64,000 nucleotides of DNA from Epiperipatus broadwayi (GCA_028023455.1 JAQFVV010000010.1:15066001-15130000), one strand, 5' to 3'. Shown: positions 6,601 through 53,404, counted from the stretch's first letter. The notes: generated by a model not told the origin, from the sequence alone. Numbers and translations: made by a program.

Positions 6601-6640
6601 TAGTGTTATATATAGTTAATATGTATTCTCTTTATTATAG

Positions 6641-6816
6641 CATGTTGGAATCCTGATCCTCATTGTAGACCAACCTTTCAAGACATCTTACAAGAATTAG
6701 AAGAGATTGCCCAATCACCTTTCATGAATACTCCACAAGACTCTTTCCATACTATGCAAGAAGATTGGCGATTGGAAATCGAAGAGATGTTCCATGAACT
6801 CAGGTGTAAAGAAAAG
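6641..6816 (+). CDS. slpr: MLK exon: end of kinase domain and first leucine zipper (CWNPDPHCRPTFQDILQELEEIAQSPFMNTPQDSFHTMQEDWRLEIEEMFHELRCKEK)
   Basis: Acceptor tttattatag|CA, donor AAG|gtaatg; 176 nt open. The peptide closely resembles the MLK1/2/3 segment CWNPDPHSRP...SFH..Q..W..EI..MF..LR.KEK (recalled, not searched). Confidence 0.95.
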
Positions 6817-10480: not shown

Positions 10481-10727
10481 GAGCTTCGTTCTCGTGAAGA
10501 AGAGTTGACCAAGGCTTTACTCCAGCAAAAAATTCAAGAAGAATTTTTGAAAAAACGTGAGCAGGAGCTTGCAGAACGAGAAATTGACCTGCTGGAACGG
10601 GAACTAAATATCATGATTCTGCAGCAACAACAGGGGCGCCCTACCCCAAAGAAACGCAAGGGTAAATTCAAGAAGAGCCGTTTAAAATTGCTTAAGCATG
10701 GAGGTCAGAGGATAAGTATGCCATCAG
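10481..10727 (+). CDS. slpr: MLK exon: second leucine zipper, basic region, start of CRIB (ELRSREEELTKALLQQK...RISMPS)
   Basis: Acceptor attttattag|GAG, donor TCAG|gtaaag; 247 nt; overlaps ORF 10505-10750. ELAEREIDLLERELNI and KKRKGKFKKSRLKL are MLK hallmarks. Confidence 0.96.
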
Positions 10728-13300: not shown

Positions 13301-13506
13301 AATAGTTGAATGATTATATTTGGGACAGTATAAATAAAATTTGAATTTTTCTAGAAACATTTAACAATTAAACTAGATGATGGAAGTAATCTAATAATAT
13401 AACTACAAATTTTTAAAATTAGTTTGGGTGTGCGTGTGTGTATATGTGTTACTTTAAATTAGTTTAAGCATACTTGTATAATAATTTAACTTTTTTTTGT
13501 TAAAAG

Positions 13507-13632
13507 ACTTTAGGCACAACATCACCGTTCAACAAACTCCTTCTATTCTTGAGATGCGTAAAATGCATCTACCTTCCAGTCCAGATAGTCCACCAGCATC
13601 ACCAAGCATACCTCGGTTAAGAGCATTTGCAC
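13507..13632 (+). CDS. slpr: MLK exon: CRIB motif and SP-rich segment (DFRHNITVQQTPSILEMRKMHLPSSPDSPPASPSIPRLRAFA)
   Basis: Acceptor ttttttttgttaaaag|AC, donor GCAC|gtaaga; 126 nt, phase 1-1. Completes CRIB ISMPSDFRHNITV. Confidence 0.94.
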
Positions 13633-15783
13633 GTAAGAATTTTTTTTTTTCTTTAAGAAAATAATTGATAAAATTTAGTATACAAAGGTATAACATAGTT
13701 ACTACAATGATGTTAATCATTTTCTTGTTAATTATATACTCAAATTTGATTTTTTACTATACCTCCCAATAATCCAAAAAAAAAACAAATAGAATGCACT
13801 TTACATTTTACTCCTTATATCCCTTTCCCCGTTCAATTACAAAGTTTTTCTTGTCTTTCTAAGGGCTTAATTTGTTGTATTTATGTCTATTTTTGCTTTT
13901 TCCTCCTTAATAGTTTTAAGATAAGAATACTTTTAATTTTGAAGTCCTCATTAAGTTATTTTACCATTATTTCTGCACATATCTAAAGTGTGGGCTTTTC
14001 TCACAAATTTATTATTGATTAATTATTATTCTCGTGAATTTTTTTTTCTCTGTATTTTGAAATTTGTAAATTCTGATTTATTAAAATATATATTGCATTA
14101 GAAAAGTTAAGGAAATAGATATTTTGAAGTAATTTTTTTTTCTCATTATATATATATAACTTGCATTATGTATAATGTATGAAATTTGTCATCTCATATA
14201 GTGAAATATTCACGCTAACAACACTTTCATATTAAAAGTTTGTTGGAAATATTCTCATTTTTTGATGTTAGGATAATGCACACAAGGATTTATACATACT
14301 AACAATCATAAATTCAATTGTTACTAATTTTCTTTTTTTCTGAGTCAACTTAATATCTGGTAAAATGAAAATACACAGAAAAAATAGTTTTTTAATAAAA
14401 GTAGTTTTTTAAATCTAAATATTATTAAAAAAAGAACCTTTTTTGTGTGTATTTTCATTTTACAAGATCATGCTAATATTTACTAAGGCAATAAACGTCA
14501 AGGAATGTACGTTTGAAAATGCGAAAGTAGAGACCTCTACAGGTCTTAACCACAAGCTTACGCTTTGGAAGAAAAGAGGGCAACCCTTCTTTACTTCAAC
14601 CTACTTTCTAAATAAATAGGTGAAGCTGAAGCAGTTAGATCTGAGAGCGTGAAGCTATTCAATACTTCACTAATTAAGTCCACAATTCCTATTACACATT
14701 AGTACTCGTGAAATCTTTCAATTTACAATGAGTCAATGGATATAAAATTTAAAGGATTTTGACAGATTATTTTTAATATATATATATTATAACAATAACA
14801 GGTGAGAAGTTTTGGTAGGTGATGATGATGATGGTTCATCAAACTCCTCTGATGAAAGAATTTATTTGTAAATGTCACTTCCTTTATATCTACAATCATT
14901 TCTTGTGTAACTCTAACAGAATACAAGAAATTAAGATATTATTAATGTAACCCCTATTAGTTTGACAAATAACCAAATTTCTAATATATTATTAAAATAT
15001 TTATTAATATAGCTTAAATAAAGAAAATAATAGATTTATATAAAAAATGTACGTAGAAAGTAATTAACAAATTTACATAGATTAATAAATAATCCAATAT
15101 CGAATTTTATGAAAAATTTTTGTTCCTAAATTATAATTATTCCAATAGAATGAAAATTTGACACAAATAAATCACTAAATGCTTGTTTATTGACTCATTT
15201 TATTTCTGGAACACCTTGGAAAATTTATGCTAGTCACATGTATATGAGAATTTCTATTGCAGATTATAAATTTCACTTAGACAATATTCATAACTAGGTT
15301 TTGCAGTCAAACAGATTTTTTGTTTTCTTAATATTTATTTAGTTTCATTAATGTTTAGTTACCAAAAGACTCTCAGGGTTGACTGCTTTTACAATAAAGA
15401 TTTTAATAAAGACAATGCAGATCAATTAAAGGAACTCTAGTGAGAAACAAATTTCTTCTGCTTTTTACTTAGATATATTATAGTCATAGATCAACATTTT
15501 TTTAAGACTAGACTTTTTTTCCTGTTTTAGATGGCTGCTCTAGCTATGCTTATGTGCAGTTAGTTCTCTCCTCATGCCAATTGACTACCAAAGTGAACTT
15601 TCCCAAGTTTCTTATTTCTTTCTCTTTCTTTAGAATAAATTATAATAAAATTGTAACAACTTTTTATATAGGTTTCTTGTCACCTCAGGAAATTATTTTT
15701 AATTAACTCTATTTTTTTCATTGCATTATAATCCACTTTCAGCTAATTCTATAACTAATTAGAAAGTTTTGGAAATTTTCTTT

Positions 15784-18529: not shown

Positions 18530-18950
18530 ACAAGAGATGGTGATCATGTGGTTTAACACCAATCCTGCCTAATAGGATAGTAGTGGCTATGATTGTTAAA
18601 GAGCCAAAGACACCAAAATGTATGGGTGCTGAACTGACTTCAGACCCATATGACTATATAAGCTATTGAGCTTAGATTGAAAAAATTGTGCTTTCAATTT
18701 CATTCTCATAGTTTTGTAGTGAAGTAGAGAGAAAAGGTGGCTGCTGGAGGGTTGCATTGGATTCTAAGATTTAGGTGCAGTGCTCTCAGATCCAAGGTCT
18801 GACTGATGAAGGCCACAAGCCAGAAACTAGTCTGGGAATATTGGATGAGTAGACACTAGATAGGGATTTTATGCACAAGCCTTCTGGCATCCATTCATTA
18901 CTCTGGTTGGCACAGGGTGGCACTACTGAATGGAGAGTTTTGCCTTGTTC
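18530..18950. repeat. Repeat family A copy (same orientation as 3135-3600) with the best-preserved hammerhead-like core
   Basis: Similar to the 3135-3600 copy and the reverse complement of 43325-43715. Confidence 0.85.
18799..18836 (+). ncRNA. Minimal hammerhead ribozyme-like motif (family A)
   Basis: CUGAUGA-AGGC-CACAA-GCCA-GAAAC-UA-GUC-UGGG: both catalytic core boxes, stem II GGC/GCC, palindromic ACUAGU stem III and GUC site. The stem II closing pair is A.A (non-canonical). Confidence 0.5.
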
Positions 18951-23182: not shown

Positions 23183-23277
23183 GTCGAGCATTGGTGGCCT
23201 AGTGGTTAGCATAGCTGCCTTCCAAGCAGCTGACCCCAGTTCGCTTCCCAGTCAATGCTTTGACATATCAAAAAAAA
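23183..23277 (+). pseudogene. tRNA-Gly(TCC)-derived retroposed copy (minimal SINE)
   Basis: GCATTGGTGGCCTAGTGGTTAGCATAGCTGCCTTCCAAGCAGCTGACCCCAGTTCGCTTCCCAGTCAATGC; damaged T-arm; A tail; near-TSD aaaagcagtctacc / aaaagtagtctacc. Confidence 0.85.
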
Positions 23278-24565: not shown

Positions 24566-25323
24566 TGTTATATCCGCACTTACGACTGTGCCAATGTTAT
24601 AACTGCAAGTCATACTGTGCGGTCAGCAAATAACGTTATACAATTCCCACGCTGTTCTTTTCCAACGAGTGCTCTCCAACGAATCGGTCTGCAACGAAAC
24701 TCCAATGAATTGGTCTGCAATGAATGCTCTCCAATGAATTGGTCTGCAATAAAGCTCTCCAACGAATTGGTCTGCAATCTCGTCTGCTGAATTGGTCTGC
24801 AACGAATGCTCTCCAACAAATTGGTCTGCCACGAAGCTCTCCAAACGAATTGGTCTGCAACGAAGCTCTCCAACCAATTGGTCTGCAACGAAGCTCTCCA
24901 ACGAATGCTCTCAATATCTCCGCTGCGGTCTCTTTCAGCTACACCCGTGAACTACATTTCCACTGGGCGCTGATCATTAACCACCAGCACTGACGCGAGA
25001 TATCTCTACTTAAATACTGCTTACTCAATACTGCTTGACTGCTCTCTACTGCTCTCTCTGTTACACTGCTAGATGTTACCCAGTCTTCTTATCGCTCTCT
25101 GACAACTGCAACGATCAATCAATGCACTGACCAATAAGGTAACGTCTCTTATCTAGAAACATTTGTAATTAGCAAATATTTCTAGGAATTGTCGATCGCC
25201 ATTACGTCAATGCACTAATTAAATTCCTCAGCTATCAGAGCGCGATCTAAAAACAGCCTTACGAATAAATTCTAGTTTTTTCTGGAGTGCACAAACATGT
25301 CTGCCATTTTACAAAACATTACA
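24566..25323 (+). mobile_element. Solo LTR (758 bp), TG...CA termini, 5-bp TSD GATTT
   Basis: gattt|TGTTA...TTACA|gattt; CpG-rich compared with flanks; AATAAA at 25264-25269 and TATA-like cttaaata at 25009-25016 suggest + orientation. Confidence 0.75.
24673..24908. repeat. Tandem ~28-bp minisatellite (AATTGGTCTGCAACGAAGCTCTCCAACG) inside the LTR
   Basis: About 8 variable units visible directly. Confidence 0.9.
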
Positions 25324-27200: not shown

Positions 27201-27762
27201 AACATTGCTATGATTTAACAGATTGTGTAAGCATAAGAAATGATGGTCATGTGATGTTTTAGTAGTTTAATATATATATTTGCATATTTTAATGATTGTT
27301 TATTACTCTAAATTATGCTCTCATTGAGATTCTTTTCTAGTGTTAGGATGAATACAGATTTGCTTGTTGCCATTAGTAATTAGTATCTTAGAAAAACAAT
27401 GTGGGTGTGATTAGTACAGCAATTTAGATATAAAAATGTCCAAGTTTACTAAAACTTATTAGTAAACTTGGACATTTTTTTTTTGGGCAGCTGCAAGTTT
27501 TTGCGCTAACTTTTTTTTCTTCAGTTAATCTATCCATAGATAACCTAGCCATTCAATTTTTGTTTAGTAAATGGGTATTTAGCTAAAAAAAAAAAAAAAG
27601 GGGGGGGGGGCGTAATAATCTGGTTTTTAATTTGAGTCATAGTATACTGACTTTAAACAAAAATATGATTGAATATAATGCACCCTTCACCATCGGTGGG
27701 GGAGATATCCTATTCTTATGGTAACTGTTAATGTATTTTTTTTTCTTTTCTTGCTAACAAAG

Positions 27763-27783
27763 CTGTATCACCAAGTCATTCAG
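27763..27783 (+). CDS. slpr: Microexon 1 (21 nt, phase 1-1): (P/A)VSPSHS
   Basis: ttttcttttcttgctaacaaag|CTGTATCACCAAGTCATTCAG|gtaaat; pyrimidine tract, AG, strong donor, frame-preserving. Confidence 0.75.
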
Positions 27784-28105
27784 GTAAATTCCATTTGTTT
27801 CTCATCAATTTCAATTTTTTTCAATTCTCTTTATAATAAATCCCGTTTTGCATCAATTAAGAGTATTTTTTATTTACTAGTGCTCCATTTTTGTTCTTTT
27901 TTTTAATATATTATTTATTATATATACTTCGGTTAATTTTTCTTAGACACAGCTTAGCATAAGATTGTAATAAACTTTTACATTTAAACTTTTCTTATTT
28001 AGCGTTCCTAGCGCTTATGTTTTTCATTTTTTTATTTATTGTATATCATGCTATTTTCTTTGCTTGTCTGTTAATTGTATTTTTTTTCCTCTCGTTTTTT
28101 TAAAG

Positions 28106-28126
28106 CTGTATCACCGAGTCACTCAG
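28106..28126 (+). CDS. slpr: Microexon 2 (21 nt, phase 1-1): (P/A)VSPSHS
   Basis: ttttcctctcgtttttttaaag|CTGTATCACCGAGTCACTCAG|gtaatt; differs from microexon 1 only at two synonymous third positions. Confidence 0.75.
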
Positions 28127-29087
28127 GTAATTCATATTGGAATTTGTGCAAACTTTCTTATAGCATTTTATAACTCAGTTATTAAAAAAGGAAAAATATT
28201 TCTTTTTATCACTATAATTTTATACATTTTAAAATTCTTTAATAAATTTTTGTGGCAATAATTTCATCATAAAACTTTTTTCTTTCGATTGTTTTATATC
28301 TAAGAAATATATATATATTGTTATTGCAAAGTTAAATATTGTATTCTCCTTTCAGTCTTTTACCAGTTAAGTGTCTCAATTTACCTCTTTTCCTATTCCT
28401 AATAATTCTCATCTGACCAATGAGGTATTTAATTAAGATTAGCTTACCGATAACAAAACTTTTAATTTAATAAATAAATTGGCTTTTTAACTTATAAATG
28501 AGTTTAAAAAAGAACATTACATAATCGGTCTTTCATTAATATACTGTTACTTTGTTCACATAAGTGTGTGTGTATATATATATATGTTGTATAGAAACAT
28601 AGCAAATAACTTTTTCCAAATAATATGTCAAAAAGTTGGATGTTACTTTCATATTCATAAGCTTGTAAGAAGAACCTGGGTTTAAAAATTCTCAAATTGT
28701 TGGGATCTAATGGAGCATTGATATCTGAAACTGTTTTAATGTTTCAAGATCAAATATCTCAATAATAATGACTGCTGTCCCTAAATGGAGAGAATGAGTC
28801 TTTTAAAAATAACTGTGGTTAAGATTCATTGTTTATTGAGAGAAATTGTTAATCTTAAGAAGAATTGTAATCAGAATATCTATTTTCAAATAAATCATTA
28901 CAGAGATCAACACACATCTGAAATTCTGTTAAAATGATGATTGAATGCATGTTAATAATTTTTATTAGTTATTCATAAGACTGGAGATTATCCACTTAAT
29001 GAATAATATTTCCAAAGTATAATTTTCAGTACACACAAGGTAGGGACTGGTTTCCTACCCACTATTAACACCTTGTGGAGGAGGGTA

Positions 29088-29327
29088 ATCATAAACATAT
29101 GACCAAAGACGTGAAAAAGATATATGACCTTCATTATGTGCTGAACCAGCACTCATCAGTTGACCCATACATATCTTTATCATTGTTCAGTAAAGAGATC
29201 ATGTATACTGGACAATGATAACGATATGTGTAAGAGAATGTGAGCTGCACCAACTGATGAGTGCTGGTTTAGCGTAAAATGGAGATCATACATCTTTTTC
29301 ACATATCTTTGGTCATATGTTTATGAT
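29088..29327. repeat. Family B fold-back (inverted pair with degenerate CUGAUGA cores)
   Basis: atcataaacatatgaccaaaga...aaccagcactcatcagttg pairs with caactgatgagtgctggttt...tctttggtcatatgtttatgat. Confidence 0.85.
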
Positions 29328-32008
29328 CACATCCCTCTACAATCCTTACCTTGTGTGAATGATATACTGAAAATTACACTACAAAAATATTCATTAAATG
29401 ATTGAATGCACATTATAAAATTAAATATCGCATCGTTTATCATTTCCCTGAACGCTGAAAAGGGTTTTTGTTTAATGATCATTAAGACAAGTTTATTCCA
29501 GATTGTCTCCTTGTAATTACAAAACATAATGATGGAGTTGCCATGCTCATATTATGGAAGTTTTTTATTCTGTTCAACAGACTATTTAAACAGTTGGGGG
29601 TCAAACATTATTTCAGATAACATTGTTATCTTCCAAGATTATAATTTTTCAATATATACCTCCCATGCAATAAAATAGTTGTGTGAAAATCATGAGAAAA
29701 ATGATATATATATATATACAATTCTTTAACTTCCCAAATAACCTAATTTAAATATTATAGAATCTCCACAGACTATTTTTGGATGAATGTAATTGATGTC
29801 TAATATTTCTATAGATGCTTTTCATAATTAACATTCATCCATATAAAATACAACCAATTTTTAGTTCAAATAATGGTACTCTGTATATGATAATCTTCAA
29901 TTTTCTCCTTTCTTTAACATATAAATGTGCATGCACACACACATCTTTATTCTGAAGTTAAAGTTGAATATTGAGTAAAATTCCCGGACATTAAAATAAC
30001 CCATTAACCGAAATATAAATGGGGAAAGTCATGATATATTTATTGTGGATATTTTCTATCTTCTTCATATAAATTTAACTATCATTCTTCAGAACACCGT
30101 TTAGTATCATGGGATTTTTTCCTTATCTTTCCTCCATTTCTCAGCCTTGTTTTTTCATAAAGCTTCTTATTCATTCATAAACAATTGAATTTCACTTTGC
30201 TCTGTTATTTTATTTTACTAATCTTACGTATATGTGAGTATATATACTTCAAAATTACTTATTAATATTATTGTTTCTTTGTATTTTGTTTTTAATTTCA
30301 AAAATATATTGTATGATTTATTTATTTTTATTATACAAAGATTGTTACTCTTAACTCTCTCATGATGTTTACCACTTTATGACCCTTATTTGAATTGTTG
30401 TCTATTAACTGTATTATTTTGATCTTATATGATTTTCTTTTAGAACTATAATTGTTTTTCAATTTACCTGTTATATAATGCAATGGACATTAATGATGCT
30501 TTAAAGGGCAAACCTAGGATAGTTGATAACGCACATTTAAGATGCTGTTTTGAGTAATTATTTATCTGTTTTATATTTGGTTAAGTCTGGGTGGTGTACT
30601 TCATCATCATCATACTCGTCATTCAATTGGGTGCCATCAGGTTTTATATTTTGGTTAAATTGGATAGTATTGCTGTATCATTGGAATAATTTCTTACATA
30701 ATTATAGCTGTGAATGTATTTGTTTTCCTCTATTTATCAAATAAAATGCAATAGAATATTAACTATAATACATAAAAAAATTAACAGTGCTATGTATATG
30801 TTAAATTTAAATGAAACATCAGAGAGTGAAATTAACTTTGCTTAATGTCTTTTAAGTTCAAAATTTCTATCAAATTCTGGGAATCTTTGTTATGATGAAC
30901 AGCTTGAAAGAAAATGTGTGAATTAACTGCATATTTTTAGGATGTAGCTTCAGTGTTCCATATTTCTGTAGTTTTGTCAGTATTTTTCTCATTGGCAAAT
31001 ATTTTGCTGATAGGATGTCTGCTCATCAATAGAATATTTAACAATATAGTATCAGTCTCTTAATATTGCAATATTATTTGCATGTTTGCATATAAATATG
31101 CTGGATAAATTTAAATATTCATAGCTGGAAGTCATTTATTCCTGTGTTAAATATTAGAAAGAAAGCATTTGTATAAATATTTTAATCAAAAAAACAAAAT
31201 TTGTAATGTAATTAGAATAAAGTTTGGAATGTAATTATTTGTTAAAACTTATTTAATTTTGTTAATTATGTAAGAAGCCCCAACTCCATGTGATATCTGA
31301 AAAATCTTACATCAGTGGTAAGAAAACCTGAAAAGGTTTAAAAAAGGGTGTTGAGCTATTGTTAAAAAAGTTACTAATCAGAGCCAATCAAAATTAATCA
31401 GTAGTTTTTATTAATTACAATTTTTTAGCTAAATATTTAGATGTTAATTTGAATTATTCTTCTTATTGAATAAAAAAATATCCAGTAAATAATTATATTA
31501 AAATTATCTCTAAAAATAAATTTATTTAAATATATATATACATATATTGTTATCATATAAAGAAATAAAATAATTCTTATAATCTCAATGTAGATATTAG
31601 TTAGTTACCTAAATAATTTTTTTCTTAATTTGATTTCTCATTGAATTTCTATCTTACTTTATGTAATTTCAATCTCTCCTTTATATATATCTTTTGTCTA
31701 TCTGCATGTGATTAGTTATTTACTATGGAATGATCATTTCGATATCTAGATATTGGCGTTGATAATATAAAATGGGTTTAGATTAAAGTGGCATTGAAAT
31801 TATCTCATTTGTGTGGTTTTAATAAATATAAGCAAAAAAAAAAAAAAATCAGTATTATAATTTATATAGTAAATTGAAAAAAAGGTTTTTATCTATAAAC
31901 TGAGATCTGCGGGTTATAAATATCTTGGACATAAGTGCACCCCAAGTTTAGACATTAAAATCATTTAGTTAAGATTGTTTTAGGTTTGAATAGATAAATA
32001 GAGTAAAT

Positions 32009-32449
32009 CAGGGGTGGGCAGTTGTTTTGGCTCGGGGGCTGCAGAGGTTGGCAGAGAGCCGCATTGTGAAAGCGAAGGTTAGCTGAGGGCCGCACCTTTT
32101 TTTCATGATGCAATAAACACTACTTTATTCTCTGTATTACCAAAAAAATATTTGTTTGTCCATTCTTCATTAAACACATGATATTCATCACCGATTTTTT
32201 ATTTTTTCAGAGGGTTCATGGTTTCACTAAAATTGGAAATGTATATATTTGCTAATGCAAAGACAAAATTTAAATTAACCAGATCAACTGGAAAAGCACT
32301 GCATATCATATCAATACTGCGCATGTGTATTGACATGGCCATCCTAGTAGAAAATAAGAGACGAATCTTCGGTCATGCATGGGAAGGAAATCTCAGTTCA
32401 AGGCAGATATTTCTGATTGTCTTGGTGGGCCACTATTTGCCCATTCCTG
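32009..32449 (-). mobile_element. hAT (Buster/SPIN-like) MITE, copy 1
   Basis: TIR CAGGGGTGGGCA / TGCCCATTCCTG; perfect 8-bp TSD GAGTAAAT (nnnTAnnn); reverse complement of 48199-48667. Confidence 0.92.
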
Positions 32450-33469
32450 GAGTAAATCATGATTTTTTTTGTTTAAACCTCCATAAATCTTGTTATTAAT
32501 AACAACCTTTACTATGAAATAATTATACAATAATTTAAACAAAAAAAGTAATGCCATTAATTCCCTTTTTTTACTATTTGGCCATGAAAATAAAATGATA
32601 TTTTTAGATGTTGCACAATTCTAATTCGTCTTCTTTTTGGTTTATGTATGTAAAATAAGAAAATTGAACAGGCTGGATAATCTATAATTTTTTTTAAGAT
32701 CTGAATTATTTATTTTGCTTTAACAGTAGTTTCTCTTATATTTTTACGCATTAAATAGGTTGTTTGTTCTTACACTTCTGCAGTAGTAGATTGCAGAATC
32801 TTACTAACGCCAATTGGGTGACTTTCACTGAATTGAGATGTCTCCGAATTATGCTGTGCTTCCTTATGTTCAATTTTTGGAACCAAATGCTGTTATTTTA
32901 AAATATTTTTCTAGTTTATTTTTTATTCTTTTTTTTCAGTAATGTGAAGTATTTTTATGTATATTTACTTTATTTTTTATTTAGAAATGAAAATATAATT
33001 TGATAATAAATTTCTTTTATTTCTATCAAATACTTGATCGTATATCTCGTACATGGAGCTAGGGTATATGCAAAATGTACAGACAAAGGAACATACTTCA
33101 CTAAGAAATGAAAAGATATGTTGAAGTTTAATGTCATTACAATGCAAATTTATTAAACAATGAAATTGTGGAATATACACCTAATTAAGGGCATATTTAT
33201 AGTAAAATAAAATTGATTGATTTCTGTTTATAGGCTGGGTGAGAAATAATATTAAATTAGAAATAAAATGTTTAGAAGGATGCAGCACACAAAGCATTTA
33301 TATCCATATATATCTACATAAAAAATAAGATGTATAGATAATGCATTTGTGAGGGGGATGGAAAAGAGATTATAAACAAATTAGTCAGAATAAAAGAAAG
33401 ATATTGTGAAAAATGAATATGAAAAATTGTTTAAAATAAAATATAATGGTGAGTCAATAATTGTATACA

Positions 33470-34250
33470 CTTAGGCTGTATAATTTATTTTAAAAAACTT
33501 TCAGAAAAGAAAAATACATCATTTTGCAACATAATTTTCCAGCTTTTCAAAACATTGTCTATCTATCAAGAAGCTTTTGTATTCCTTCATTAAAAAATGT
33601 TTTAGGCTGAGCTGTAAGCCACAAATACACTGTTACCCTTCTTTATCAAACATAAATCTCCATCCTTACATGGCTCTTTCCAGGACCAAACAGATGATAG
33701 TCAGATGGTCAAAACTACAGAAAGGGTGCTCCAACATCTCAAAATTAAAAACTTTTGGACAGCAGTTTGTGCTGGTGCATTGTTGTGCAACATACAATGC
33801 TCTTGGATATAGCCTTCTAAAGTTGTGACCATTCCAATATAATAAATGTTATTGATTGTTGAACCTTTTTTCTTGATAATGTTCCAATACTGACCCTTGA
33901 GAATCCCAAAAATTGTAGGAATCAATTTTCTAGCTGATAATTAATACTGACATAAACTTCCTTGAACTTCTCTGATAATGACAAAACACTTTCTTAATAC
34001 TGTACACAAATTCTTCAATAAATATTGGCACCAAACACTCCCTCAGACACAAAAAAATGAATCCCTGCAAACTGCTTTTCTTTTGTACAAATCACAAGTC
34101 GGGCAGCTACCCATTATTTCTCACACCAGACTCATAATTGAATGTTCAAAACTGCATAGCAGTGACTGGGAAGAGATCTCATACAGGATGCATTGATAAG
34201 ACAGTGCAGCCAGAAGAAATTTTAATATAAGCAGAATGTGAATAATTTTT
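33470..34250 (-). mobile_element. Degraded mariner transposase relic
   Basis: Minus strand: WVAARL (WVPxxL), MLHNNAPAQT (LHDNAxxH), FEMLEHP..SDYHLFGP (HPPYSPDLAPSDYHLF). Confidence 0.75.
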
Positions 34251-36209
34251 GACTCACTCTCATATATATGGTTTGAAGGGTAAAAAGATTTAATCCAGTT
34301 TCTCCAATCTCTAACCTCTTTTCCACATCACACCAGCATACTTCTAATGAATTATGTTTTTTCTTTCACTATTCCTCTTTAGAAACAGTTAAAGAGATTT
34401 TTATTGCAGTAGTGGCTATTTTAAAGTTTGTTACTTTTTACCTATCATTAGTATCATCCTAACTCCGGAAAGGAGGATGGAGATTGATAAAGAGGAACAA
34501 AAATTAAAAGTTTTTAACCTATCTATAAACCACGTTTCACATCCAGCTCTTAATTTCACATCTTACCATGCTTCCTTTTAATCTCATCTGTAATAAGCTT
34601 CTATTTGTGAAAAATTTCAATAACTTGCCTAATTGTAGCTTTCTATTATATTCTGCCTTTGGTTCATAATCTACCAATGAAACTGTATATTCATAATGCT
34701 TATGCACCATGCTTGGAAATTACAACAGTTAACTTTGTTTTAAGCTGTTAGTGTAGGATTTAACAATACTTTGATTTCAATTGTTGTTATATAAAATTGC
34801 TTATAAGTATATACTTATACAATTTATAGAATAAATTAAACTTCTTTGTCAAAAAGAAATGTATCATGTAGATAAAACTGATTCACTATATATTAAATGA
34901 AATAATTGATGCTTGAACATGATAAGTTGTTGTTTTTTTAATGAATTTTTATCATAGGATTTTGGCTATCATATACAATTGTGAATAAATACATATTTAT
35001 ACAAAACATACAATTAAATTAAATTTCATAAAAGAGCAATATTATGGATACTATATTCTGATTACATGTTTTTGAAATATCCTGACATTAGAAACTACCA
35101 CCATTTATTGTCTTATGCTTTAAAAATAAAATTTTAGCATAGAATTTTATTTTTTTTTGGTGTCATACATTGTACAATTAGGAATCAATATGTATTACAA
35201 GTGTTTATATTGCATACAGATAAATACATTTTGTCCTAATAGTTCATATATTCATTATTTCCATTAATATGCACACTATAATAATTGATGTCTTTGTAAA
35301 TATTTTTGGAATCCCATATTGACTGATCTAACTGTTGAGAAAATAGAGGGCTTCATGCAGTTCATATAATTTTAAACCATCTTTTTTTGGTCTTTCCCAT
35401 TTGGAATAGTAAAAGATCCTTAAATGGGAATTTTCAAGCGTACAACAATGCATTTACCATGCGAAACATTTGTTTCATTTGGAAAATAATTATAAGTACA
35501 GTAATTCATTTTTGAGTATAGTGATCTATGCTAAATCGTAATTAAGGATTCCCAGTTTAATAATCTGTTCTTGTTAGTGATTTTTGAGTTTTCAGAAAGT
35601 AGTATATTCAGAATATTTAGATAGCAAATAAAAATTGAACTCAAAATTGCTATGTGCAGAAATATTGTTGCATAAATACAATCCCATTGTTGAAGTCAAT
35701 ACATGAGGATAATTAATAGCATGAGAAATTTGTAAAAACTGATATTTACGTCAATCCAACTGGCTATAAACAATGAAGTTTAAAAAAAGAAAATGAAAAC
35801 ATATAAAAAAGAACTGCTTATATCAGACAAGGTAAGAAGAGTATATTCATCAGATACTTACTCATAGTGGAAAGTCAGTCAGTCCACTATATCCATCAAC
35901 AGTGAACCATATCAATAGCCATAGTTTAGCATGCGACTTTTATCTATGCATTCAGATTTGAAAATAAAGCATATTATGGGGGGAAATTATTAGTGAAGAT
36001 ATTTATAATTCTATAATAGTTACGAATGAAAAATGTAGTTCTTTTATTTATATTATTATTTTTAATATATTTAAAAATTAGATATTACATTTATTTAGAT
36101 AATTTTTATATAGTCTTCAGATTTGTTTTAAGAAAAAAGTTACCCAAATATATACACATATATATTTTCTTACCTGATTTATTACATGTTTTTTTTTTTT
36201 TCTTTCAAG

Positions 36210-36227
36210 TCTCTCCGAGTCACTCAG
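36210..36227 (+). CDS. slpr: Microexon 3 (18 nt, phase 1-1): (V/L)SPSHS
   Basis: tttttttttttttctttcaag|TCTCTCCGAGTCACTCAG|gtaata; long U tract, frame-preserving, same peptide. Confidence 0.72.
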
Positions 36228-41009: not shown

Positions 41010-41480
41010 TCTATTATATACTGACAAATGTTTATCAGTCTCATTGGCTATCTTAATATATATCTGAGCACTTATTTCATATATGTGTAGAGATGATAAT
41101 CTGGACCAACAGATGATTGCTGGTTTAGCATGAAATATTATATGGGTGATTATTTATCTTTTCGATATATATGTGTTCAAGTGTATCAGAGATATGAGAT
41201 AGAGTGGTGAGTCTTTTGAAAAGTCTGTACTCATATACCCTATCTATTATATACTGACAAATGTTTATCAGTCTCAAATAATCACCCATATACATATTTC
41301 ATGCTAAACCAGCAATCATCTGTTGGTCCAGATTATCATCTCTACACATATATGAAATAAGTGCTCAGATATATATTAAGATAGCCAATTTTCATACTTC
41401 AATGGACAAGTTTCAATCTACTCCAACTCTTCAACCATTCATCCCATTGAAAATCTGATGATGGAATGCTCAATGTACAA
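41010..41480. repeat. Family B copy with a recent inverted duplication
   Basis: 34-bp perfect direct repeat (41010-41043, 41243-41276); 113/114-nt inverted arms (41043-41155, 41276-41389) differing by one indel. Confidence 0.9.
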
Positions 41481-43324: not shown

Positions 43325-43890
43325 AATCGGGCAAAACTCTCCATACAGTAGTGCCAATCAATGGATGCCAGAAGGTTTGTGCATAAAATCCCTATCTAGT
43401 GCCTACTCATCCACTATCCCCAGACTAGTTTCTAGTTTGTGGCTTTCATCAGTGAAGAACATTGGCTCTGAGAGCACTGCACCTAGATCTTAGAATCTAA
43501 TGCAACCCACGAGTCTAAAATTGAAAACATAATATTTTCAATCCAAGCTCATTAGCTTATATAGTCATATAGGTCTGAACTCAGTTCAATAATCAGCCAT
43601 TTTGGTATCTTTGGTTCTTTAATAACCATAGCTACCACTATCCTATTAGGCAGGATTAGTATTAAATCATTAAATATCACATGATCACCATTTCTTATGC
43701 TTGCTCAAGCTGTTAAAACAGGCAAAACTCTCCACACAGTAGTGCCACTCAATGCAAGCCAGAGTAATCAAAAGCCTTCTGGCATCCATTGATTACTCTG
43801 GCTTGCACTAAGTGGCACTACTGTATAGAGTTTTGCCTGTTTTAACAGCTTCAGCAAGCATAAGAAATTGCAATCATGTGATGTTTGGTG
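43325..43890. repeat. Family A copy followed by a ~200-nt hairpin (43676-43883)
   Basis: Arms of about 95 nt around the loop 43772-43788. A further family A fragment lies at 44410-44512. Confidence 0.85.
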
Positions 43891-44935: not shown

Positions 44936-45121
44936 TACCCGTTGGTGGAATTAAAGGTAAAACATGGGGACCAAGTACTGTTCATCAACGAGAACGTGGT
45001 CATTCTCGTTCACGCACATCTATAGATGGAAATAAGCGGTGGTCTAAAAGTGCACCGAACCTAGAAAAATCGTTACGGAGTTTAGGAGGCATTCCCAATA
45101 TAATAACTGTACCAGAATTAG
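44936..45121 (+). CDS. slpr: MLK exon (xPVGGIKGKTWGPSTVHQRERGHSRSRTSIDGNKRWSKSAPNLEKSLRSLGGIPNIITVPEL)
   Basis: Acceptor tctttctctttatag|TA, donor TTAG|gtaata; 186 nt open, phase 1-1. KTWG and WSKSAPNL motifs are typical of MLK C-terminal regions. Confidence 0.9.
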
Positions 45122-46199
45122 GTAATATTATTAATAAGTTATTCATATTTATAAATGTTAGTATTACAGAAATTGGACAACTAACAAAAATATTTGTTTT
45201 CGCATTACATTTTTGATTATTTTGGCACAAAAATAGAAATATAAAATGTGTAATATTTTATTCTTTTTTTTTAACTGATAGAAATTTAAGAGGTGATAGG
45301 TAATATCTTATAGAAAATTAGCATTTCTTTTATAAGTTTGTGAAAGAAAATGTCACATTTGTTTGGGTTTAAAGAGCATCAAATTAATACTACCAGATTA
45401 ATTGTAGCATCAATATCCAAAAGTGCTGAATTATTTAATGAGTAATGTTTGCAAAGGTATACTTCATAATACCTAATAGAGCCACCAAATCTAATTCACA
45501 TTAATTTGTATAAAATTTCATCAATACTCAGTCTCAAGTATGATTCGGACTACATTTAATAATAATGGAAAACAAAATCTGTTAGGAGTACCTGTGGTTA
45601 GAATTCAATGCTAATACGCATTATACAAAATTATAGTTTAAAAAAAACCTCAACCGACATAAATGAATCCATTATGAGCTTCAAAAGGAAAACATTTATG
45701 ACTGAACTGCCATTTCAAATCCATTATTTTCTGATTTGAATGTTATGTTATGTGATGCTGTGAACATTAAAAAATGATGAATGGAAGCATGTGTTATATG
45801 GACAAATCAACTAACTATTGGAAAAAAAATGTTAGACCATCTCCAAATGGTGTTAATCAAACAGAATAATTTCTCCCAAATATGGTATATGATTAATAGA
45901 ATAGTTGTGATTTGGACAGTTTTTGAATAAGACTATATAGAGAGGATACTTGGATGATTTAAAAAAGATGTGAAAAGATTGAAAGCTTTTGTACTGTGGA
46001 TTTGGAGAATAGAAAAAACAAGTTTGAAATATATGACTTACTATGTTGAAATAGAAGACAAATTGTGTTCAACATTAGATATATTTAAATGAAAGAGTAT
46101 TATGAAGGATAATACATAAATTTTTAAAAAATGAATAAATGCTGTACTTAAAACTTAATTTTAAATAACATATTAAGAAAAATATTGATAGATTTTAAA

Positions 46200-47990
46200 G
46201 ATGGTTCAAATTTGAATGAAATCAATAAGAAAATAACTGATACACTATTTAGAACTGCAATAAAGATAATGGGTTCAAAAAACCAGCAATTTACTAATAA
46301 ATTTTTTACCAAGACGAGACAATGTATAAAGAAAAAAAAGGAATATGAATATATGATCCGTTAAGAATTTAACATCTAGAATTTTGTAAAATGTACGAAA
46401 AAGAATTATAAGAAAATATAATTGAAAATTGGGCAAGGAAAGTTATGGAAGAGGATAAAAATCTCAGAATTGTTAAACATCATCTTAGAATTGGTAAAAA
46501 AAACTTATTTCTGCAATAAGAAGAAAAGATGGAACTATTACTACAAAGAGAAATAACAATTAAATGTGTGGAAGAGTTCTATAAAGAATTATATAACAAT
46601 AAAGAACAAGGAAAAGTATCTCTTGCAACTACTATATTTTCTGAATTGCCCAGGATTTTAAATTAAGAAATGAGACATGCAATTAAATTTGTGAAGGAAA
46701 AAGCTCCAGATAATGATGGAATTACCATTAGCATCATAAAAAAAGCAGGTTAGTAATAGAAAAATTATTGGCAAAGTTATATACCAGATGATTGGAAGAA
46801 TGCAGTAGTAATATTGATATTTTAAAAAGGTAATAAAGAAGATATTAAAAATTTCAGACCTATTAGTCCTTTATTAGTTCTATAGAAAAATTTTACTAAG
46901 ACAATTACAATTAGTATGCAGCAAATTTTGGATTTTAACCAATCAAAAGAGCAAGCAGGATTTAAAATTGGTTTTATCTCAGTGGATTACATCAAAGTAT
47001 TGAGAAAAGTTATAGAAAGGACCAATGAAATGAATTGCCATTATATTTTGGATTTGTAAATTCTGAAAAGGCATTTGATTCTGTAAGCCTTTCTTCAATG
47101 ATTAAAGCATTGGTTCATCAAGATATAGATTTAGGATATTGTCATATTCAGAAAAATACTCATCAAAATGCAACAGCAATGATTAAATTTCATAGTGATA
47201 CTAGAAAGATTAACATTGAGATGGATATATGAGTGTCTCCATGTCTCCAAAACGTTTTACAGTAGTTTTACATGAAATATTTTATAGAGTAAAATAAGAA
47301 CCTAAGGGGAATAAAAGTAAATGGAGAAATTACATAAGTCATCTAGATTTTAGCAGATGATGTGTTTGTTTTTGTAAATAATGCTTCAGAATTTCAGGAA
47401 ATGTTGCAGGAGTTATATCAGATAAAAGTAAAACTAAAGTAAAATAACATCCAATAGATTTTCTCAAAAAAAAAGAAATAAAGATTGATAGTGATGAATT
47501 AGAAGTTGGTAATTACAAATACTTTAGTCAGATGGAAGCATAATGAATGAAAATAATCATAGAATTAAACTTGTGGAATGCTTTTGGTAGAAATAAATTT
47601 AATATTGAAAGAAAGTATGCTTATGTATTGGAAAGGGAAGGTTTTTATATTTTAGCAGTTCTAACTTATGGATTTGAGATTTGGACTCTTAACAGAAGAG
47701 CAATACAGAGACTTCAAACTATTCAACTAGCCATGGAGAGAACAAAAAACATAATTGAGAGAATAAATATATTACTGAAATCATTAAAAGAATTAAGAGA
47801 TTGGACTGGAGCTGGGCTGAACATATTGCTAGAAGAAATGATAATAGATGAACAGTTAACTAAATTCCTAGAAAGAAACCACACATGAAATGAAATAAAT
47901 AAGTTTGTTCATCCTTACATGAAAAAAAGAGATTGGAGAAACTAGATTAAACTTGTAGAGGCTATCCTGAAGTGGATCGATAAGGGTTGA
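46200..47990 (+). mobile_element. Degraded RTE-clade LINE reverse transcriptase
   Basis: PDDWKNAVVILI.KGNKEDIKNFRPIS, EQAGF, LYFGFVNSEKAFDSVS, LADDV, VLTYGFEIWTL, QLAMER; multiple stops. Confidence 0.85.
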
Positions 47991-48198
47991 AAATGATGGA
48001 TAAAAATCAGAATAATGATCAAAGGGGATTGAAAGAAATAAAACATTCTTTCTAGCAAGATTCACTATTTTGGAATTAAAAATTAATAGAATTTAGTTAA
48101 ATATAACAAATCAAAATTAATAATACTTATTAAGTACTCTTTTGTTTCAAGAAAATGATAGGAACAGTAATTACATATGTGGTCAATAGCGTATAGAG

Positions 48199-48667
48199 CA
48201 GGGGTGGGCAAATAGCCGCCCTCTAAGAGTTTTTATGCGGCCTTCCAAGACAATCAGGAAAATCCATCTTGAACTGAGATTTCCTTCCTGTGCACGACCG
48301 AAGATTCATCTATTATTTTCCACTAGGATGGCCACATCAATACACATGCACAGTGTAGATACTATGTGCAGGGCTTTTCCAGTTGATCTACTTAATTTCA
48401 ATTTTGTCTTTGCATTAGCAAATATATACATTTCCAACTTTAGTGAAACCATGAACCCTCCGAAAAATCGGTGATGAATGTCATGTGTTTAATGAAGAAT
48501 GGACAAACAAATATTTCTTTGGTAATACAGGGAATAAAGCAGTGTGTTTATTGCATCATGAAAAAAGGATGTGGCCCTCCGCTAACCTTTGCTTTTACAA
48601 AGTGGCCCCCGATGCGGCCCTCCACCAATCTCTGTGGCCCTCAAGCCAAAACAATTGCCCACCCCTA
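48199..48667 (+). mobile_element. hAT (Buster/SPIN-like) MITE, copy 2; internal-deletion derivative keeping the transposase N-terminus
   Basis: TIR CAGGGGTGGGCAA / TTGCCCACCCCTA; perfect TSD GTATAGAG. ORF 48485 FNEEWTNKYFF...KAVCLLHHE resembles the SPIN/GTF2IRD2 N-terminus. Confidence 0.92.
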
Positions 48668-49478
48668 GTATAGAGAATAGTAATAAATAAACAGGTAAAT
48701 GCCTAGAACATTGATTAGTAATAGAATGTAATGTGTAATATTGCTATTTTATATTGATGCATGCAAACTTATTTCAATCATTTTGAATATTTTGTCAGCA
48801 AGTATGCAAATTTATCCAATTATTGATTTAGAAGCCAATCAGTTTGCTTGTTTGTTGACAGGATACCAAAAAAAAAAGTCGCTATAGCTTTAAGGATATT
48901 TAAATGTACTCTTCCAGAAATATTTGCATTAAAAGTAAATGACAATTTTAATGATGTAACACAAGATATTCAAACTTCAATTGTTTCTATAACCATATTC
49001 TTATATATATTCTTTCATCTATCTCATTTTAAATTACATTTTCTTATGTATATCACTCGCATTCTGAATCATTTCCCAAATTGTTTATTTTACGCATTAA
49101 TATTTTCTTTAGGAAAAATAATATATAAATTAGCAATAAATAGATCAATTTGAGAATCAAATATAAAAATAAAGAGAAAAAAAAATTTTGTAAGGTTTTC
49201 AACACACTGGGATTTAACAATAATCTGAAAACAGACAAAATAATTATTTTAAATAAGAAGAATCATTTATCTTTATCATAAGTTACTTTTCAGTTTTACT
49301 TTCAAAATTGAAGTTTATTCACACCCAAAAGGGATTTACAAAATATACATATCAAATACAAAATTTCAATCAGTTTTATTCAAGCTATGATATATAATTT
49401 TGTATAGAATTTTTATGCATTTTTAAAACATATGGAATTTGTTTATTTTTTCCATTTTAATGTAATAAAGTAAATTCA

Positions 49479-50150
49479 TTTTTTTTTTTTTTAATTAAGA
49501 AAAAATTTACAGTGTCAGGTAGCTATATTTTGCTGATTAGAATAGTTTTATGTAGAAGTTCAAAGCTTTGCAACCACTCTGTGTGGCATTGTCATCATAT
49601 TATTTAGTGCAGTAGTCCGAGATGTTGTCTCATCGTCAGATATGGTAATCTGAGCCCATGTGTCCACAAAGAGATGCTCTGGCACAAGGAGGCGATCTCT
49701 GTTCTTCATGTTTATTAGTATTTTTTTTAAAGTTCTCCAAGGATCACTATGTCCTTGTCTGAAGATATGCTGGCATCTGGTGATCCATAAAGCATGTAGT
49801 AGGCATGCCGCTAGCCTGATAGTTGCATACTTTCCTTCTTTCATTGCTCGATCAATTGACAGGACATTGCCACAGCCAGAGGAAATGCTTGCGATAATTT
49901 TGTTTCTAGTGTATCTCAAGTATGAGCAAGCATAGAAGATGTGCTCCAGCGTTTCTTCATGTATATTACAAAGTTTACACATGGGGCTTATTTGACGAAA
50001 TCCTCTTTGCATCACCAAAAAGTGACTGGTGGGCAAAGAGGACAAGTTAAACTTGATTATAAAATCAACCAACTTTGGTCCTATCCACCAGTATCTTGAC
50101 TTCCTGAGCATTTGTTTCACTGACAGTCTTAATCAGGTAGAACCCCATTT
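49479..50150 (-). mobile_element. 5'-truncated Tx1/L1-clade LINE 3' end
   Basis: Intact 186-codon ORF (49560-50120) with CCHC knuckle CKLCNIHEETLEHIFYAC and LWITRCQHIF; short 3' UTR; poly(A) read as the T tract near 49479-49492. Confidence 0.8.
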
Positions 50151-50494
50151 ATGTATTTTTTTTTTACTTCTCTCTGATAAAAAAAATGTTTTAAACAATT
50201 TTTTTATTATATATATATATATTTGGCAGTAGAGGTTAAGGAGTATACAATAAAAGATAACTCTAAAATAATTACATATTAATTTGCCTTATTTAACATG
50301 CTACTATAATAAATTATATATGCATAATATGAAAATCAGCATACAGTCATTATAGAAAAAATGTTTGATGCTAGTGTGAATCGTCCTTTCTTAATCAACT
50401 TCCTAGATATTCAAATTTAATAATTCTCATAAATATGCATTTTTCTATTTCCTAGTTAAATAATCATAAATAGGTACTAAATATGTTTAATCAC

Positions 50495-52136: not shown

Positions 52137-53404
52137 ATTATGAAGAAGATGAATGGCCTGAAACGCCAGGATTAGCAAAGCCTACTCTTGTTCCATATAA
52201 TGGCACTTCTACTCAGGAAGGTAGCTTAAAAAGATTTACCATAAAAAAGTTCAGCGAACTTGTGCTGTACAATATTGGTGCCATGTTGGCAGGTATAGGA
52301 GCAGGATATGATATTCGTGTCTGTAATTCAGTACAACCACGTCTTGGTGCTAGCACTGAGTGTGATGAAGATGAGACAAAAAGTCGCAATAGGGACTCAA
52401 TTATAAGTTCAGATTACGAGTGGTCAACACCATCTGGTTATCCACATAATACTTACCATGGACAGACTCGGCATTATCGACCAAGTTTGAATCTTGAAAG
52501 TAATTTGCCCTTGCGTTTCACTGATTCACCTCAGCATTATGCCAATACTCCTACATATACACAATCCCCACGTCGAAAATCTTCAACGGCTAGTAATGAT
52601 AGTGATGCATACATGTCAGTGGCATCATCAACAATTGATCCTTCGAGACCTGATACTTATCAAGTGTATGAAAGATATGTTGATCATAGCAGAGCTGATC
52701 TGTATCAATCATATGATCATTATTTAGATTATATTCGGCCTGATCATATTTTTCAAGGATATGATCGTTTGCATGCTTATGATAACTATGGAAGGCAGGA
52801 TTCTTTTACTCAAGAAATTCCCAAAACTCCACAACGATATGCATATTCTGGTAATCCTGATAGGAATAGTATATATTCTCATCGGCGCACTCCTTCAAAT
52901 ACCTCCACTTCATCAAATCCTTCATATGCATTAGAAGATACTCATTTAAGACCTAATGACTGTAATACAGACATTTACCGGTCTCCAGAGCACAATTATT
53001 CTCATCATCCTGCACCACCTCCTCCACCACGACGGCAGAATAGTGGTGAACATCCTGAACGTCCTGCTACTCTTGACATCAATTCACGTCCTCGCTCCAT
53101 GCTTAGCAAACTTAAATATACTTCTCCTATGGGAAGATCTCCCAAAACATCAACATCAAGTGGAACTCCCACTACCAGTACACCTACAGAAAGTACTGCG
53201 GCCAGTGATGATAGCTCATGTGTGTCTGCTAGAGTGCGATTCTCTCCCATTTATGGCCAAAACCATGATGGTAAAACTTCTCTTGAACATTTTGACAGCC
53301 ATTCACAGGACAACAGTACTCCTGCTCACAGACTGTCAGTAAAAAATCGTAAATCTTCCTCCGAATTAGAGAGGAACTTATTACATAATGATCCTGGTGT
53401 TTAG
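52137..53404 (+). CDS. slpr: MLK terminal coding exon, Ser/Pro/Tyr-rich disordered tail ending ...LLHNDPGV*
   Basis: Acceptor gtgtttttttcag|AT; in frame with the phase-1 upstream exon; ORF 52118-53404 open to TAG; contains HRRTPS. Confidence 0.88.

What the first reader, a model, noticed from the sequence alone, without database searches (positions are those of the whole stretch)
27763..36227. Array of three duplicated microexons, each encoding VSPSHS, hidden in the 31-kb MLK intron
Seen: 21, 21 and 18-nt segments, each with a pyrimidine tract, AG and CAG|GTAA donor, all phase 1-1 like the flanking exons. All differences between aligned codons are synonymous in the MLK frame (CCA/CCG, CAT/CAC, TCA/TCT, GTA/GTC), as expected under protein-level selection. 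Microexons 1 and 2 also share upstream intron (ctgttaa-tgtattttttt), pointing to exon duplication. Full inclusion gives PRLRAFA-PVSPSHS-AVSPSHS-VSPSHS-VPVGGIKGKTWG. Known: Ser-Pro sites are JNK/MAPK targets and MLK3 receives JNK feedback phosphorylation C-terminal to its CRIB. Inference: splicing sets 0-3 identical phosphosite modules just after the CRIB, a counting mechanism rather than a choice among different sequences.
Basis: partly seen in the sequence, partly recalled or inferred. Interest (0 to 1): 0.9.

Follow-up and report, generated by a model that had tools for sequence, protein, structure and literature searches.

The report
Three duplicated MLK microexon candidates
A 31-kb intron of a stress-kinase (MLK) gene holds three tiny, near-identical exon-like segments whose sequence pattern suggests they code for protein. 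The only transcript that could be read across the site, from a related species, skips all three, so their use is still unproven.

Summary
ME1 (27763-27783), ME2 (28106-28126) and ME3 (36210-36227) lie on the + strand inside the 31,303-nt intron between the CRIB exon (13507-13632) and exon 44936-45121 of an MLK/Slpr-type MAP3K gene. Each has a long pyrimidine tract, an AG acceptor and a CAG|GTAA donor. Each is a multiple of 3 nt in phase 1-1. The window holds only these three copies, against 0 expected by chance.

All four variable sites are synonymous third-codon positions in the MLK frame (P about 0.005-0.008). Similarity covers only about 45-60 nt of upstream branch-site and pyrimidine-tract region, the exon and GTAA. 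This fits old exon duplicates kept by selection on the protein.

Inclusion is not shown. The one junction-spanning RNA contig whose continuation was shown, from related organism E, joins 13632 directly to 44936. No close relative is in the protein databases. About 170 MLKs from other arthropods, molluscs and annelids show no such insert, and the millipede intron is about 330 nt with no microexon.

The insertion point lies 10 residues after the serine of the conserved PXSP phosphosite. ME1 or ME2 joined to the CRIB exon creates a second P-x-S-P.

Verdict: probably real, lineage-specific, mostly skipped cassette microexons (about 0.55). The "counting" function is untested.

The parts
10481..10727 (+). 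Leucine-zipper exon of the MLK gene (ends in phase 1)
   Evidence: 94-95% identical to spider MLKs by blastx. Boundaries were read. The splice 10727->13507 is seen in RNA contigs of X5 and X8.
13507..13632 (+). CRIB exon (phase 1-1, 126 nt), carrying the conserved PXSP site (P-A-S-P) near its 3' end; donor CAC|GTAAGA
   Evidence: The PXSP context comes from PMC3407086.
13633..44935 (+). 31,303-nt phase-1 intron that holds the three candidates. The same intron position in a millipede is about 330 nt.
27718..27762 (+). Conserved upstream element of ME1: TTAAT branch-like site at -35, pyrimidine tract, TGC at -11, and a 56-nt AG-exclusion zone
27763..27783 (+). Microexon candidate ME1, 21 nt. Encodes (P/A)VSPSHS, where the first codon is completed by the last base of the preceding exon.
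27784..28105 (+). 322-nt intron between ME1 and ME2 (GTAAAT...AAAG)
28106..28126 (+). Microexon candidate ME2, 21 nt. Encodes the same peptide as ME1. It has no private substitution, so it is the centroid of the three copies.
36210..36227 (+). Microexon candidate ME3, 18 nt. Its acceptor is shifted by exactly 3 nt relative to ME1 and ME2. It encodes (V/L)SPSHS.
44936..45121 (+). Next constitutive exon (phase 1-1, 186 nt). Its first codon reads Leu after the CRIB exon and Val after any microexon.
   Evidence: The loose end of the X8 contig at 13632 continues with this exon's first 30 nt.
52137..53404 (+). Last coding exon of the MLK gene (C-terminal Ser/Pro-rich region, through the stop codon)

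Best explanation
ME1, ME2 and ME3 are lineage-specific cassette microexons of an MLK/Slpr-type MAP3K gene. They arose by duplication of one about 65-nt unit made of branch site, pyrimidine tract, exon and donor. Selection on the encoded peptide has kept them.

They are skipped in the predominant mRNA. I infer that they are included, singly or together, in a minority or tissue-restricted set of transcripts.

Each inclusion inserts a six- or seven-residue module, x-V-S-P-S-H-S (x-S-P-S-H-S when ME3 follows the CRIB exon directly), into the conserved linker right after the CRIB motif. The insertion point is 10 residues downstream of the serine of the conserved PXSP phosphosite. ME1 or ME2 joined directly to the CRIB exon makes the junction codon Pro, which creates a second P-x-S-P consensus. 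Later modules add bare S-P sites.

Shown:
- the sequence anatomy;
- frame compatibility of all combinations;
- the synonymous-only divergence;
- direct 13632->44936 splicing in one related species.

Inferred:
- that the microexons are ever included;
- that the added Ser-Pro sites are phosphorylated;
- that copy number tunes MLK regulation.
For: - Three copies and no others are in 64 kb, all sense to the gene, against 0 expected by chance.
- Lengths are 21, 21 and 18 nt in phase 1-1, and all 8 combinations keep the frame open.
- Four of four substitutions are synonymous third positions in the MLK frame only. P is 0.0045-0.008 under neutral substitution.
- Homology is limited to the upstream 45-60 nt, the exon and GTAA. 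Nothing aligns downstream, as expected for old duplicates that kept only their functional parts.
- ME3's acceptor is displaced by exactly one codon.
- Donors and acceptors are as good as those of the gene's constitutive exons. Pyrimidine content is higher (0.80-0.84 against 0.60-0.80) and AG-exclusion zones are longer (56-92 nt against 22-50 nt), which is typical of regulated exons (PMC8797185).
- The insertion site adjoins the conserved PXSP site.
- A gastropod MLK model also has a small insert at the same junction, so the site tolerates insertion.
Against: - The only transcript contig whose continuation past 13632 was displayed (X8, related organism E) goes straight to exon 44936.
- No inclusion read was obtained. 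Contigs drop rare isoforms, so this shows that skipping is present, not that inclusion is absent.
- None of about 170 MLK proteins or isoforms from other arthropods, molluscs, annelids and others has such an insert.
- The millipede intron has no microexon.
- Conservation in close relatives could not be tested.
- The selection test rests on only four substitutions.
- Upstream similarity is partly low-complexity T-runs.
Confidence: 0.55

Rival explanations
1. These are neutral pseudo-exons. A short intronic segment was duplicated twice and happens to carry splice-like signals, but it is never, or only as noise, spliced into MLK mRNA.
For: The only readable junction-spanning contig skips all three. 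No relative shows an insert. AT-rich introns are full of AG and GTAA, and T-runs inflate the upstream similarity.
Against: This requires several coincidences. Three lengths must be multiples of 3 in the right phase. Four of four changes must be synonymous in that frame only (P about 0.005). One acceptor must have moved by exactly 3 nt. Homology must end exactly at a donor consensus. Only 5 in-phase, stop-free AG..GTRA candidates of 9-51 nt with a good pyrimidine tract exist in the whole intron, and 2 of them are these.
Confidence: 0.22
2. They are non-coding splicing decoys or 'stepping stones'. The spliceosome recognises them to help or regulate removal of the 31-kb intron, in a recursive-splicing or decoy-exon manner, without contributing protein.
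For: They sit spaced along a very long intron at 14.1, 0.3, 8.1 and 8.7 kb intervals. They have strong signals, yet are absent from the observed mRNA. Ubx keeps two microexons in a 73-kb intron that is processed recursively (PMC8605326).
Against: No 5' splice site is regenerated when the CRIB exon (ending ...CAC) is joined to a microexon starting CTGTAT or TCTCTC, so classical recursive removal cannot occur. Variation at wobble positions only points to constraint on the peptide rather than on RNA. Ubx m1, by contrast, is conserved even at wobble positions.
Confidence: 0.12
3. The repeated unit is the 3' end of a dispersed, 5'-truncated mobile element, and its position inside the MLK intron is incidental.
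For: The sharp common 3' boundary with variable upstream extent resembles 5'-truncated retroelement copies. The intron is rich in transposon debris, including inverted repeats, a zf-RVT ORF nearby and tRNA-like SINE candidates.
Against: There are no further copies on either strand in 64 kb, including the other intronic and intergenic sequence. All three are sense to the gene and in frame. There is no poly-A or microsatellite tail and no target-site duplication. The synonymous pattern would be unexplained.
Confidence: 0.06

Closest known systems
Drosophila Ultrabithorax microexons m1 and m2 (two 51-nt cassette exons in a ~73-kb intron; PMC8605326)
   Same: Several very short, frame-preserving, similar-sized cassette exons sit inside one very long intron of a regulatory gene. 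They are included only in a subset of isoforms and insert a short linker next to a functional motif.
   Different: The Ubx microexons begin with a regenerated 5' splice site and are handled by recursive splicing. The MLK candidates cannot regenerate a donor. Ubx m1 is conserved even at wobble positions, whereas here the wobble positions vary. Ubx inclusion is proven experimentally and here it is not.
Fast skeletal troponin T exons 4-8 (combinatorially spliced small exons; PMC2447309, which lists Breitbart et al. 1985 among its references)
   Same: An array of consecutive small in-phase cassette exons can be combined freely to vary the length and charge of a disordered segment.
   Different: The troponin T exons encode different peptides and are documented in mRNA and protein. 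Here the modules are identical, so only copy number would vary.
Neuronal eMIC/Srrm-dependent microexon programme (PMC8797185; bee elav microexons)
   Same: Size is below 27 nt. The segments preserve the frame, insert into a disordered or surface region of a signalling protein, and have long AG-exclusion zones and long pyrimidine tracts upstream.
   Different: A UGC close to the 3' splice site is present only at ME1. Neural inclusion is untested. Flanking introns here are long (8-14 kb), unlike the short introns described for fly eMIC exons.
Conserved PXSP phosphosite of MLKs (Slpr S512; MLK3 JNK feedback site; PMC3407086)
   Same: The modules repeat an S-P core, with the first as full P-x-S-P, a few residues downstream of this site. 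ME1 shares a 9-nt identical stretch, in the same frame, with the exon segment that encodes it.
   Different: The constitutive site is deeply conserved across phyla, whereas the modules are lineage-specific and optional. Their phosphorylation is unknown. A 9-nt match is not proof of descent.
Tandem exon duplication giving mutually exclusive homologous exons (PMC9741552)
   Same: Origin by local duplication of an exon together with its splice signals, and same phase.
   Different: Nothing here enforces mutual exclusion, because all lengths are multiples of 3. No docking or selector complement was found. The copies encode the same peptide, so substituting one for another would change nothing.

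Membership tests
MLK / Slpr-type MAP3K gene (host gene) | Kinase C-lobe end, leucine zipper, CRIB motif, PXSP site and the G-x-KGKTWGPS block in that order | tested here: met
   Concatenated exons are 77-83% identical to MLKs of a Logan transcript (P0001), spiders, a millipede, a sea spider and a scorpion. The N-terminal SH3 and most of the kinase domain lie outside the window.
Cassette coding microexon | Length of 27-30 nt or less with canonical AG acceptor, pyrimidine tract and GT donor | tested here: met
   Lengths are 21, 21 and 18 nt. Each has AG|...CAG|GTAA, and pyrimidine content of the last 25 intron nt is 0.80-0.84.
Cassette coding microexon | Frame-preserving and phase-compatible with both neighbours | tested here: met
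   All 8 combinations translate without a stop.
Cassette coding microexon | Observed inclusion in mature mRNA | tested here: inconclusive
   One junction-spanning contig (X8) shows direct 13632->44936 joining. The X5 contig also spans the site, but its continuation was not displayed. X1 and X2 have no cover of the CRIB exon. Contigs drop minor isoforms.
Cassette coding microexon | Coding-type conservation (purifying selection on the peptide) | tested here: met
   Tested among the three paralogous copies only: 4 of 4 differences are synonymous, P about 0.005-0.008. Orthologous conservation is not testable, because no close relative's genome could be reached.
eMIC/Srrm-dependent neural microexon | UGC motif close to the 3' splice site | tested here: not met
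   TGC is at -11 in ME1 only. In ME2 the nearest is at -45, and ME3 has none within 60 nt.
eMIC/Srrm-dependent neural microexon | Long AG-exclusion zone, long pyrimidine tract and distant strong branch site | tested here: met
   AG-exclusion zones are 56, 92 and 68 nt, against 22-50 nt for the gene's other exons. TTAAT lies at -35 in ME1 and ME2, and CTTAC at -41 in ME3.
eMIC/Srrm-dependent neural microexon | Neuron-restricted, Srrm-dependent inclusion | not testable with these tools
   No tissue-resolved RNA data could be reached.
Recursive-splicing exon (RS-exon / ratchet point) | Acceptor immediately followed by GTRAGT, so that a 5' splice site is regenerated after the first splice | tested here: not met
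   The microexons start CTGTAT or TCTCTC. The junction with ...GCAC gives no GT donor.
Mutually exclusive tandem exons with docking/selector pairing | A docking site complementary to a conserved element upstream of each variant | tested here: not met
   The reverse complement of the shared upstream element has no significant match in the window: 5 hits at up to 3 mismatches against 2.35 expected.
Dispersed repeat / transposon end | Many copies, on both strands and in unrelated places | tested here: inconclusive
   Only the three sense copies occur in 64 kb. The rest of the genome could not be searched.

The most novel reading that the evidence does not exclude
Splicing sets the copy number (0 to 3) of an identical Ser-Pro phospho-acceptor module directly behind the conserved JNK-feedback PXSP site of a MAP3K. 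Isoform choice would then dial the gain or threshold of feedback phosphorylation, or the spacing within a deeply conserved linear motif, rather than swapping one sequence for another.
Probability: 0.1. Interest if true: 0.75.

Novelty: new member of a known kind. Interest (0 to 1): 0.42.

Why it matters
If the three microexons are used, they would be a clean natural case of exon duplication producing a variable number of identical short linear motifs in a signalling kinase. They sit exactly beside a phosphosite already tied to JNK feedback and the heat-stress response in flies. That would give a simple, testable model for how microexon arrays tune kinase regulation. It would also be an example of microexon birth inside an intron that grew from a few hundred bases to 31 kb. 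If they are never included, the case still has value as a caution. Splice-like signals with synonymous-only divergence, based on four sites, would then not be enough to call a microexon.

Tried and rejected
1. RNA evidence. The look-up of sequencing runs on the microexon region listed no holder, as expected for 21-nt exons against 31-mer words. Runs found with the last exon are RNA. It gave the skip form in X8, but the X5 continuation was not printed. A stretch that joins an anchor exon to a microexon would exceed the 6-kb limit.

2. Protein databases. An HMMER search of 1.84 billion representatives and two word-index searches found no protein closer than 34-44% identity in the C-terminal exon. 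Isoforms of this species or its sister species therefore could not be inspected. This is so even though runs X1-X8 hold the transcript.

3. Cluster members of 10 chelicerate MLK clusters show no junction inserts.

4. The millipede orthologous locus L001 has a roughly 330-nt intron with no microexon.

5. A docking/selector search found nothing. An inverted-repeat scan found only transposon pairs.

6. Rfam on the window and on the intron found nothing relevant.

7. Recursive splicing was rejected on sequence grounds.

8. Descent of the microexon from the PXSP-coding part of the CRIB exon rests on a 9-nt in-frame identity only. That is suggestive, not demonstrable.

9. Earlier scan notes gave nothing on this locus.
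Full report
**What is there**

The window is AT-rich, at about 27% G+C. Its + strand carries the 3' half of an MLK/Slpr-type MAP3K gene:
- the end of the kinase domain, 6640-6816;
- the leucine-zipper exon, 10481-10727;
- the CRIB exon, 13507-13632;
- a 186-nt exon, 44936-45121;
- the last coding exon, 52137-53404.

The conserved exons together are 77-83% identical to MLKs of an unnamed Logan transcript, spiders, a millipede, a sea spider and a scorpion. The host is therefore a non-insect arthropod of chelicerate or myriapod affinity. I could not name it.

The intron between the CRIB exon and exon 44936 is 31,303 nt and in phase 1.

**Check of the observation**

The three segments are exactly as described:
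- ME1, 27763-27783;
- ME2, 28106-28126;
- ME3, 36210-36227.

A 20-nt degenerate pattern for the core plus GGTAA hits only these three sites, all on the + strand. None is expected in shuffled sequence. Relaxing to three mismatches adds only chance-level hits.

A mechanical scan of the intron looked for in-phase, stop-free AG...GTRA segments of 9-51 nt behind a good pyrimidine tract. It gives five candidates in all, and two of them are ME2 and ME3.

Splicing any subset of the three between the flanking exons keeps the frame open. The junction codons change with context:
- ME1 or ME2 after the CRIB exon starts with Pro, and after another microexon with Ala.
- ME3 starts with Leu after the CRIB exon, or with Val after a microexon.
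- Exon 44936 starts with Leu in the skip form and with Val after any microexon.

Because ME1 and ME2 give the same peptide when used alone, there are six distinct proteins, not eight.

**Evidence that they are, or were, real coding exons**

1. The three cores differ at four sites. All four are third-codon positions and synonymous in the MLK frame, while the same differences change amino acids in the other two frames. If substitutions fell at random, the chance of four synonymous out of four is 0.0045-0.008, depending on transition bias.

2. Homology among the copies covers about 45-60 nt upstream, the exon and GTAA, and then stops. Local alignment of 300 nt downstream finds nothing above background. 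The upstream part holds a TTAAT branch-like site at -35 in ME1 and ME2, followed by a long T-rich tract. Old duplicates whose neutral flanks have decayed would look like this.

3. ME3's acceptor is displaced by exactly one codon relative to ME1 and ME2, which keeps the frame.

4. Signal quality matches the gene's constitutive exons. Donors are CAG|GTAA, compared with for example TAG|GTAATA at exon 44936. Pyrimidine content before the AG is 0.80-0.84, against 0.60-0.80. AG-exclusion zones are 56-92 nt, against 22-50 nt. Long exclusion zones and long tracts are described for regulated fly microexons (PMC8797185). The UGC motif of that class is near the acceptor only in ME1.

**Evidence on use**

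No run held the intronic stretch. That is expected, since 21-nt exons cannot carry 31-letter words.

Runs found through the last exon come from the window's species label (organism A) and several near relatives. Laying four of them on 10400-13700 showed that they are RNA. Contigs of X5 (4,120 nt) and X8 (1,576 nt) carry the 10727->13507 splice.

The X8 contig continues behind 13632 with the first 30 nt of exon 44936, with one synonymous difference. That is the form that skips all three microexons. The continuation of the X5 contig was not printed. X1 and X2 do not cover the CRIB exon.

Assembled contigs keep the major isoform and drop minor ones. This result therefore shows that skipping is at least predominant in that sample of a related species. 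It does not show that inclusion never happens.

**Evidence from relatives**

Neither an exhaustive HMMER search nor two word-index searches found any protein closer than 34-44% identity over the C-terminal exon. The species and its sister species are therefore absent from the protein collections.

About 170 MLKs and isoforms were inspected, from arthropods, molluscs, annelids, nemerteans, a priapulid and hemichordates. In these the sequence across this exon junction is contiguous and strongly conserved: P-R-L-R-A-x-A, then x-P-x-D-G-x-K-G-K-T-W-G. The one exception is a gastropod model with a 5-residue insert at the same point.

The millipede orthologous locus has the same phase-1 intron, with the donor C|GTAAGA, but it is only about 330 nt long and has no microexon. 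The candidates therefore arose in the lineage whose intron expanded to 31 kb. How far they extend among close relatives is unknown.

**Functional context**

The CRIB exon ends with the deeply conserved PXSP site, here P-A-S-P. In Drosophila Slpr this serine (S512) is phosphorylated and matters for the heat-shock response. In MLK3 the corresponding site is reported as a target of JNK positive feedback (PMC3407086).

The insertion point lies 10 residues after that serine, in the middle of the conserved block. ME1 or ME2 spliced straight onto the CRIB exon generates P-V-S-P, a second full proline-directed consensus. Further modules add S-P sites.

ME1 also shares a 9-nt in-frame identity with the exon segment encoding the constitutive site. 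This hints at an origin by partial exon duplication but does not prove it.

Nothing here tests phosphorylation or a counting function.

**Alternatives considered**

- Recursive-splicing exons are excluded, because joining the CRIB exon to any of the three does not recreate a GT donor. This contrasts with the Ubx microexons.
- No docking or selector complement exists for the shared upstream element. All lengths are multiples of three, so nothing enforces mutual exclusion.
- No Rfam family matches in the intron.
- A transposon-end origin is unlikely, given three sense-only copies, no tail and no other copies in 64 kb. A genome-wide count is still needed.
- Neutral pseudo-exons remain the main rival. 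That reading requires several coincidences of phase, length, wobble-only change and homology boundary.

**Verdict**

The most likely reading, at about 0.55, is a lineage-specific array of duplicated, mostly skipped cassette microexons. They would add identical Ser-Pro modules beside the conserved PXSP site of MLK.

Use in mRNA is unproven, and the only direct transcript evidence shows skipping. The copy-number "counting" idea is an attractive hypothesis with a low current probability, about 0.1. In kind, this is a new member of known classes, namely cassette microexons and tandem exon duplication, rather than a new mechanism.

Noticed in passing
window 18549-18945 and 43356-43771: Two copies of one repeat lie in opposite orientation (83-92% complementary over about 400 nt) and bracket all three microexon candidates inside the intron. 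Pairing in the pre-mRNA could loop the microexons out and favour skipping.
   Followed up: no
window 41043-41138 and 41294-41389: A perfect 96-nt inverted repeat with a 155-nt spacer, probably a young foldback or MITE insertion in the intron.
   Followed up: no
window 23187-23260 and 58948-59019: Two tRNA-Gly(TCC)-like sequences, one inside the MLK intron. Only the second reaches Rfam's tRNA threshold. They may be genes or tRNA-derived SINE heads.
   Followed up: partly
window 24663-24906: A tandem array of a 29-nt unit, 8.8 copies at 81% match, open in several frames on both strands. No Pfam match.
   Followed up: partly
window 46100-50200: Retroelement debris lies between exon 44936 and the last exon. 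It includes reverse-transcriptase-like ORFs on the + strand and a zf-RVT (PF13966) ORF on the - strand at 49563-50132.
   Followed up: partly
window 12800-13400: Many short RNA contigs from all four runs pile up here at 90-95% likeness, with depth up to 348. This indicates an expressed dispersed repeat just upstream of the CRIB exon.
   Followed up: no
proteins P0246 (Argiope) and P0261 (Stegodyphus): These spider MLK isoforms lack the DFRHNITV anchor of the CRIB exon and are 43 residues shorter than a sibling isoform, about one CRIB exon. The phase 1-1 CRIB exon itself therefore looks like a cassette exon in some chelicerates.
   Followed up: no
protein P0145 versus P0135 (Batillaria attramentaria): One gastropod MLK model carries a 5-residue insert (LYPDP) at exactly the exon junction where the microexon candidates would insert. 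It may be an independent microexon or an annotation artefact.
   Followed up: no
window 27636-27718 and 51947-52023: An 84-nt similarity at 75% identity (E = 1e-5) links sequence just upstream of ME1's conserved element with sequence about 115 nt upstream of the last exon's acceptor. Its meaning is unknown.
   Followed up: no
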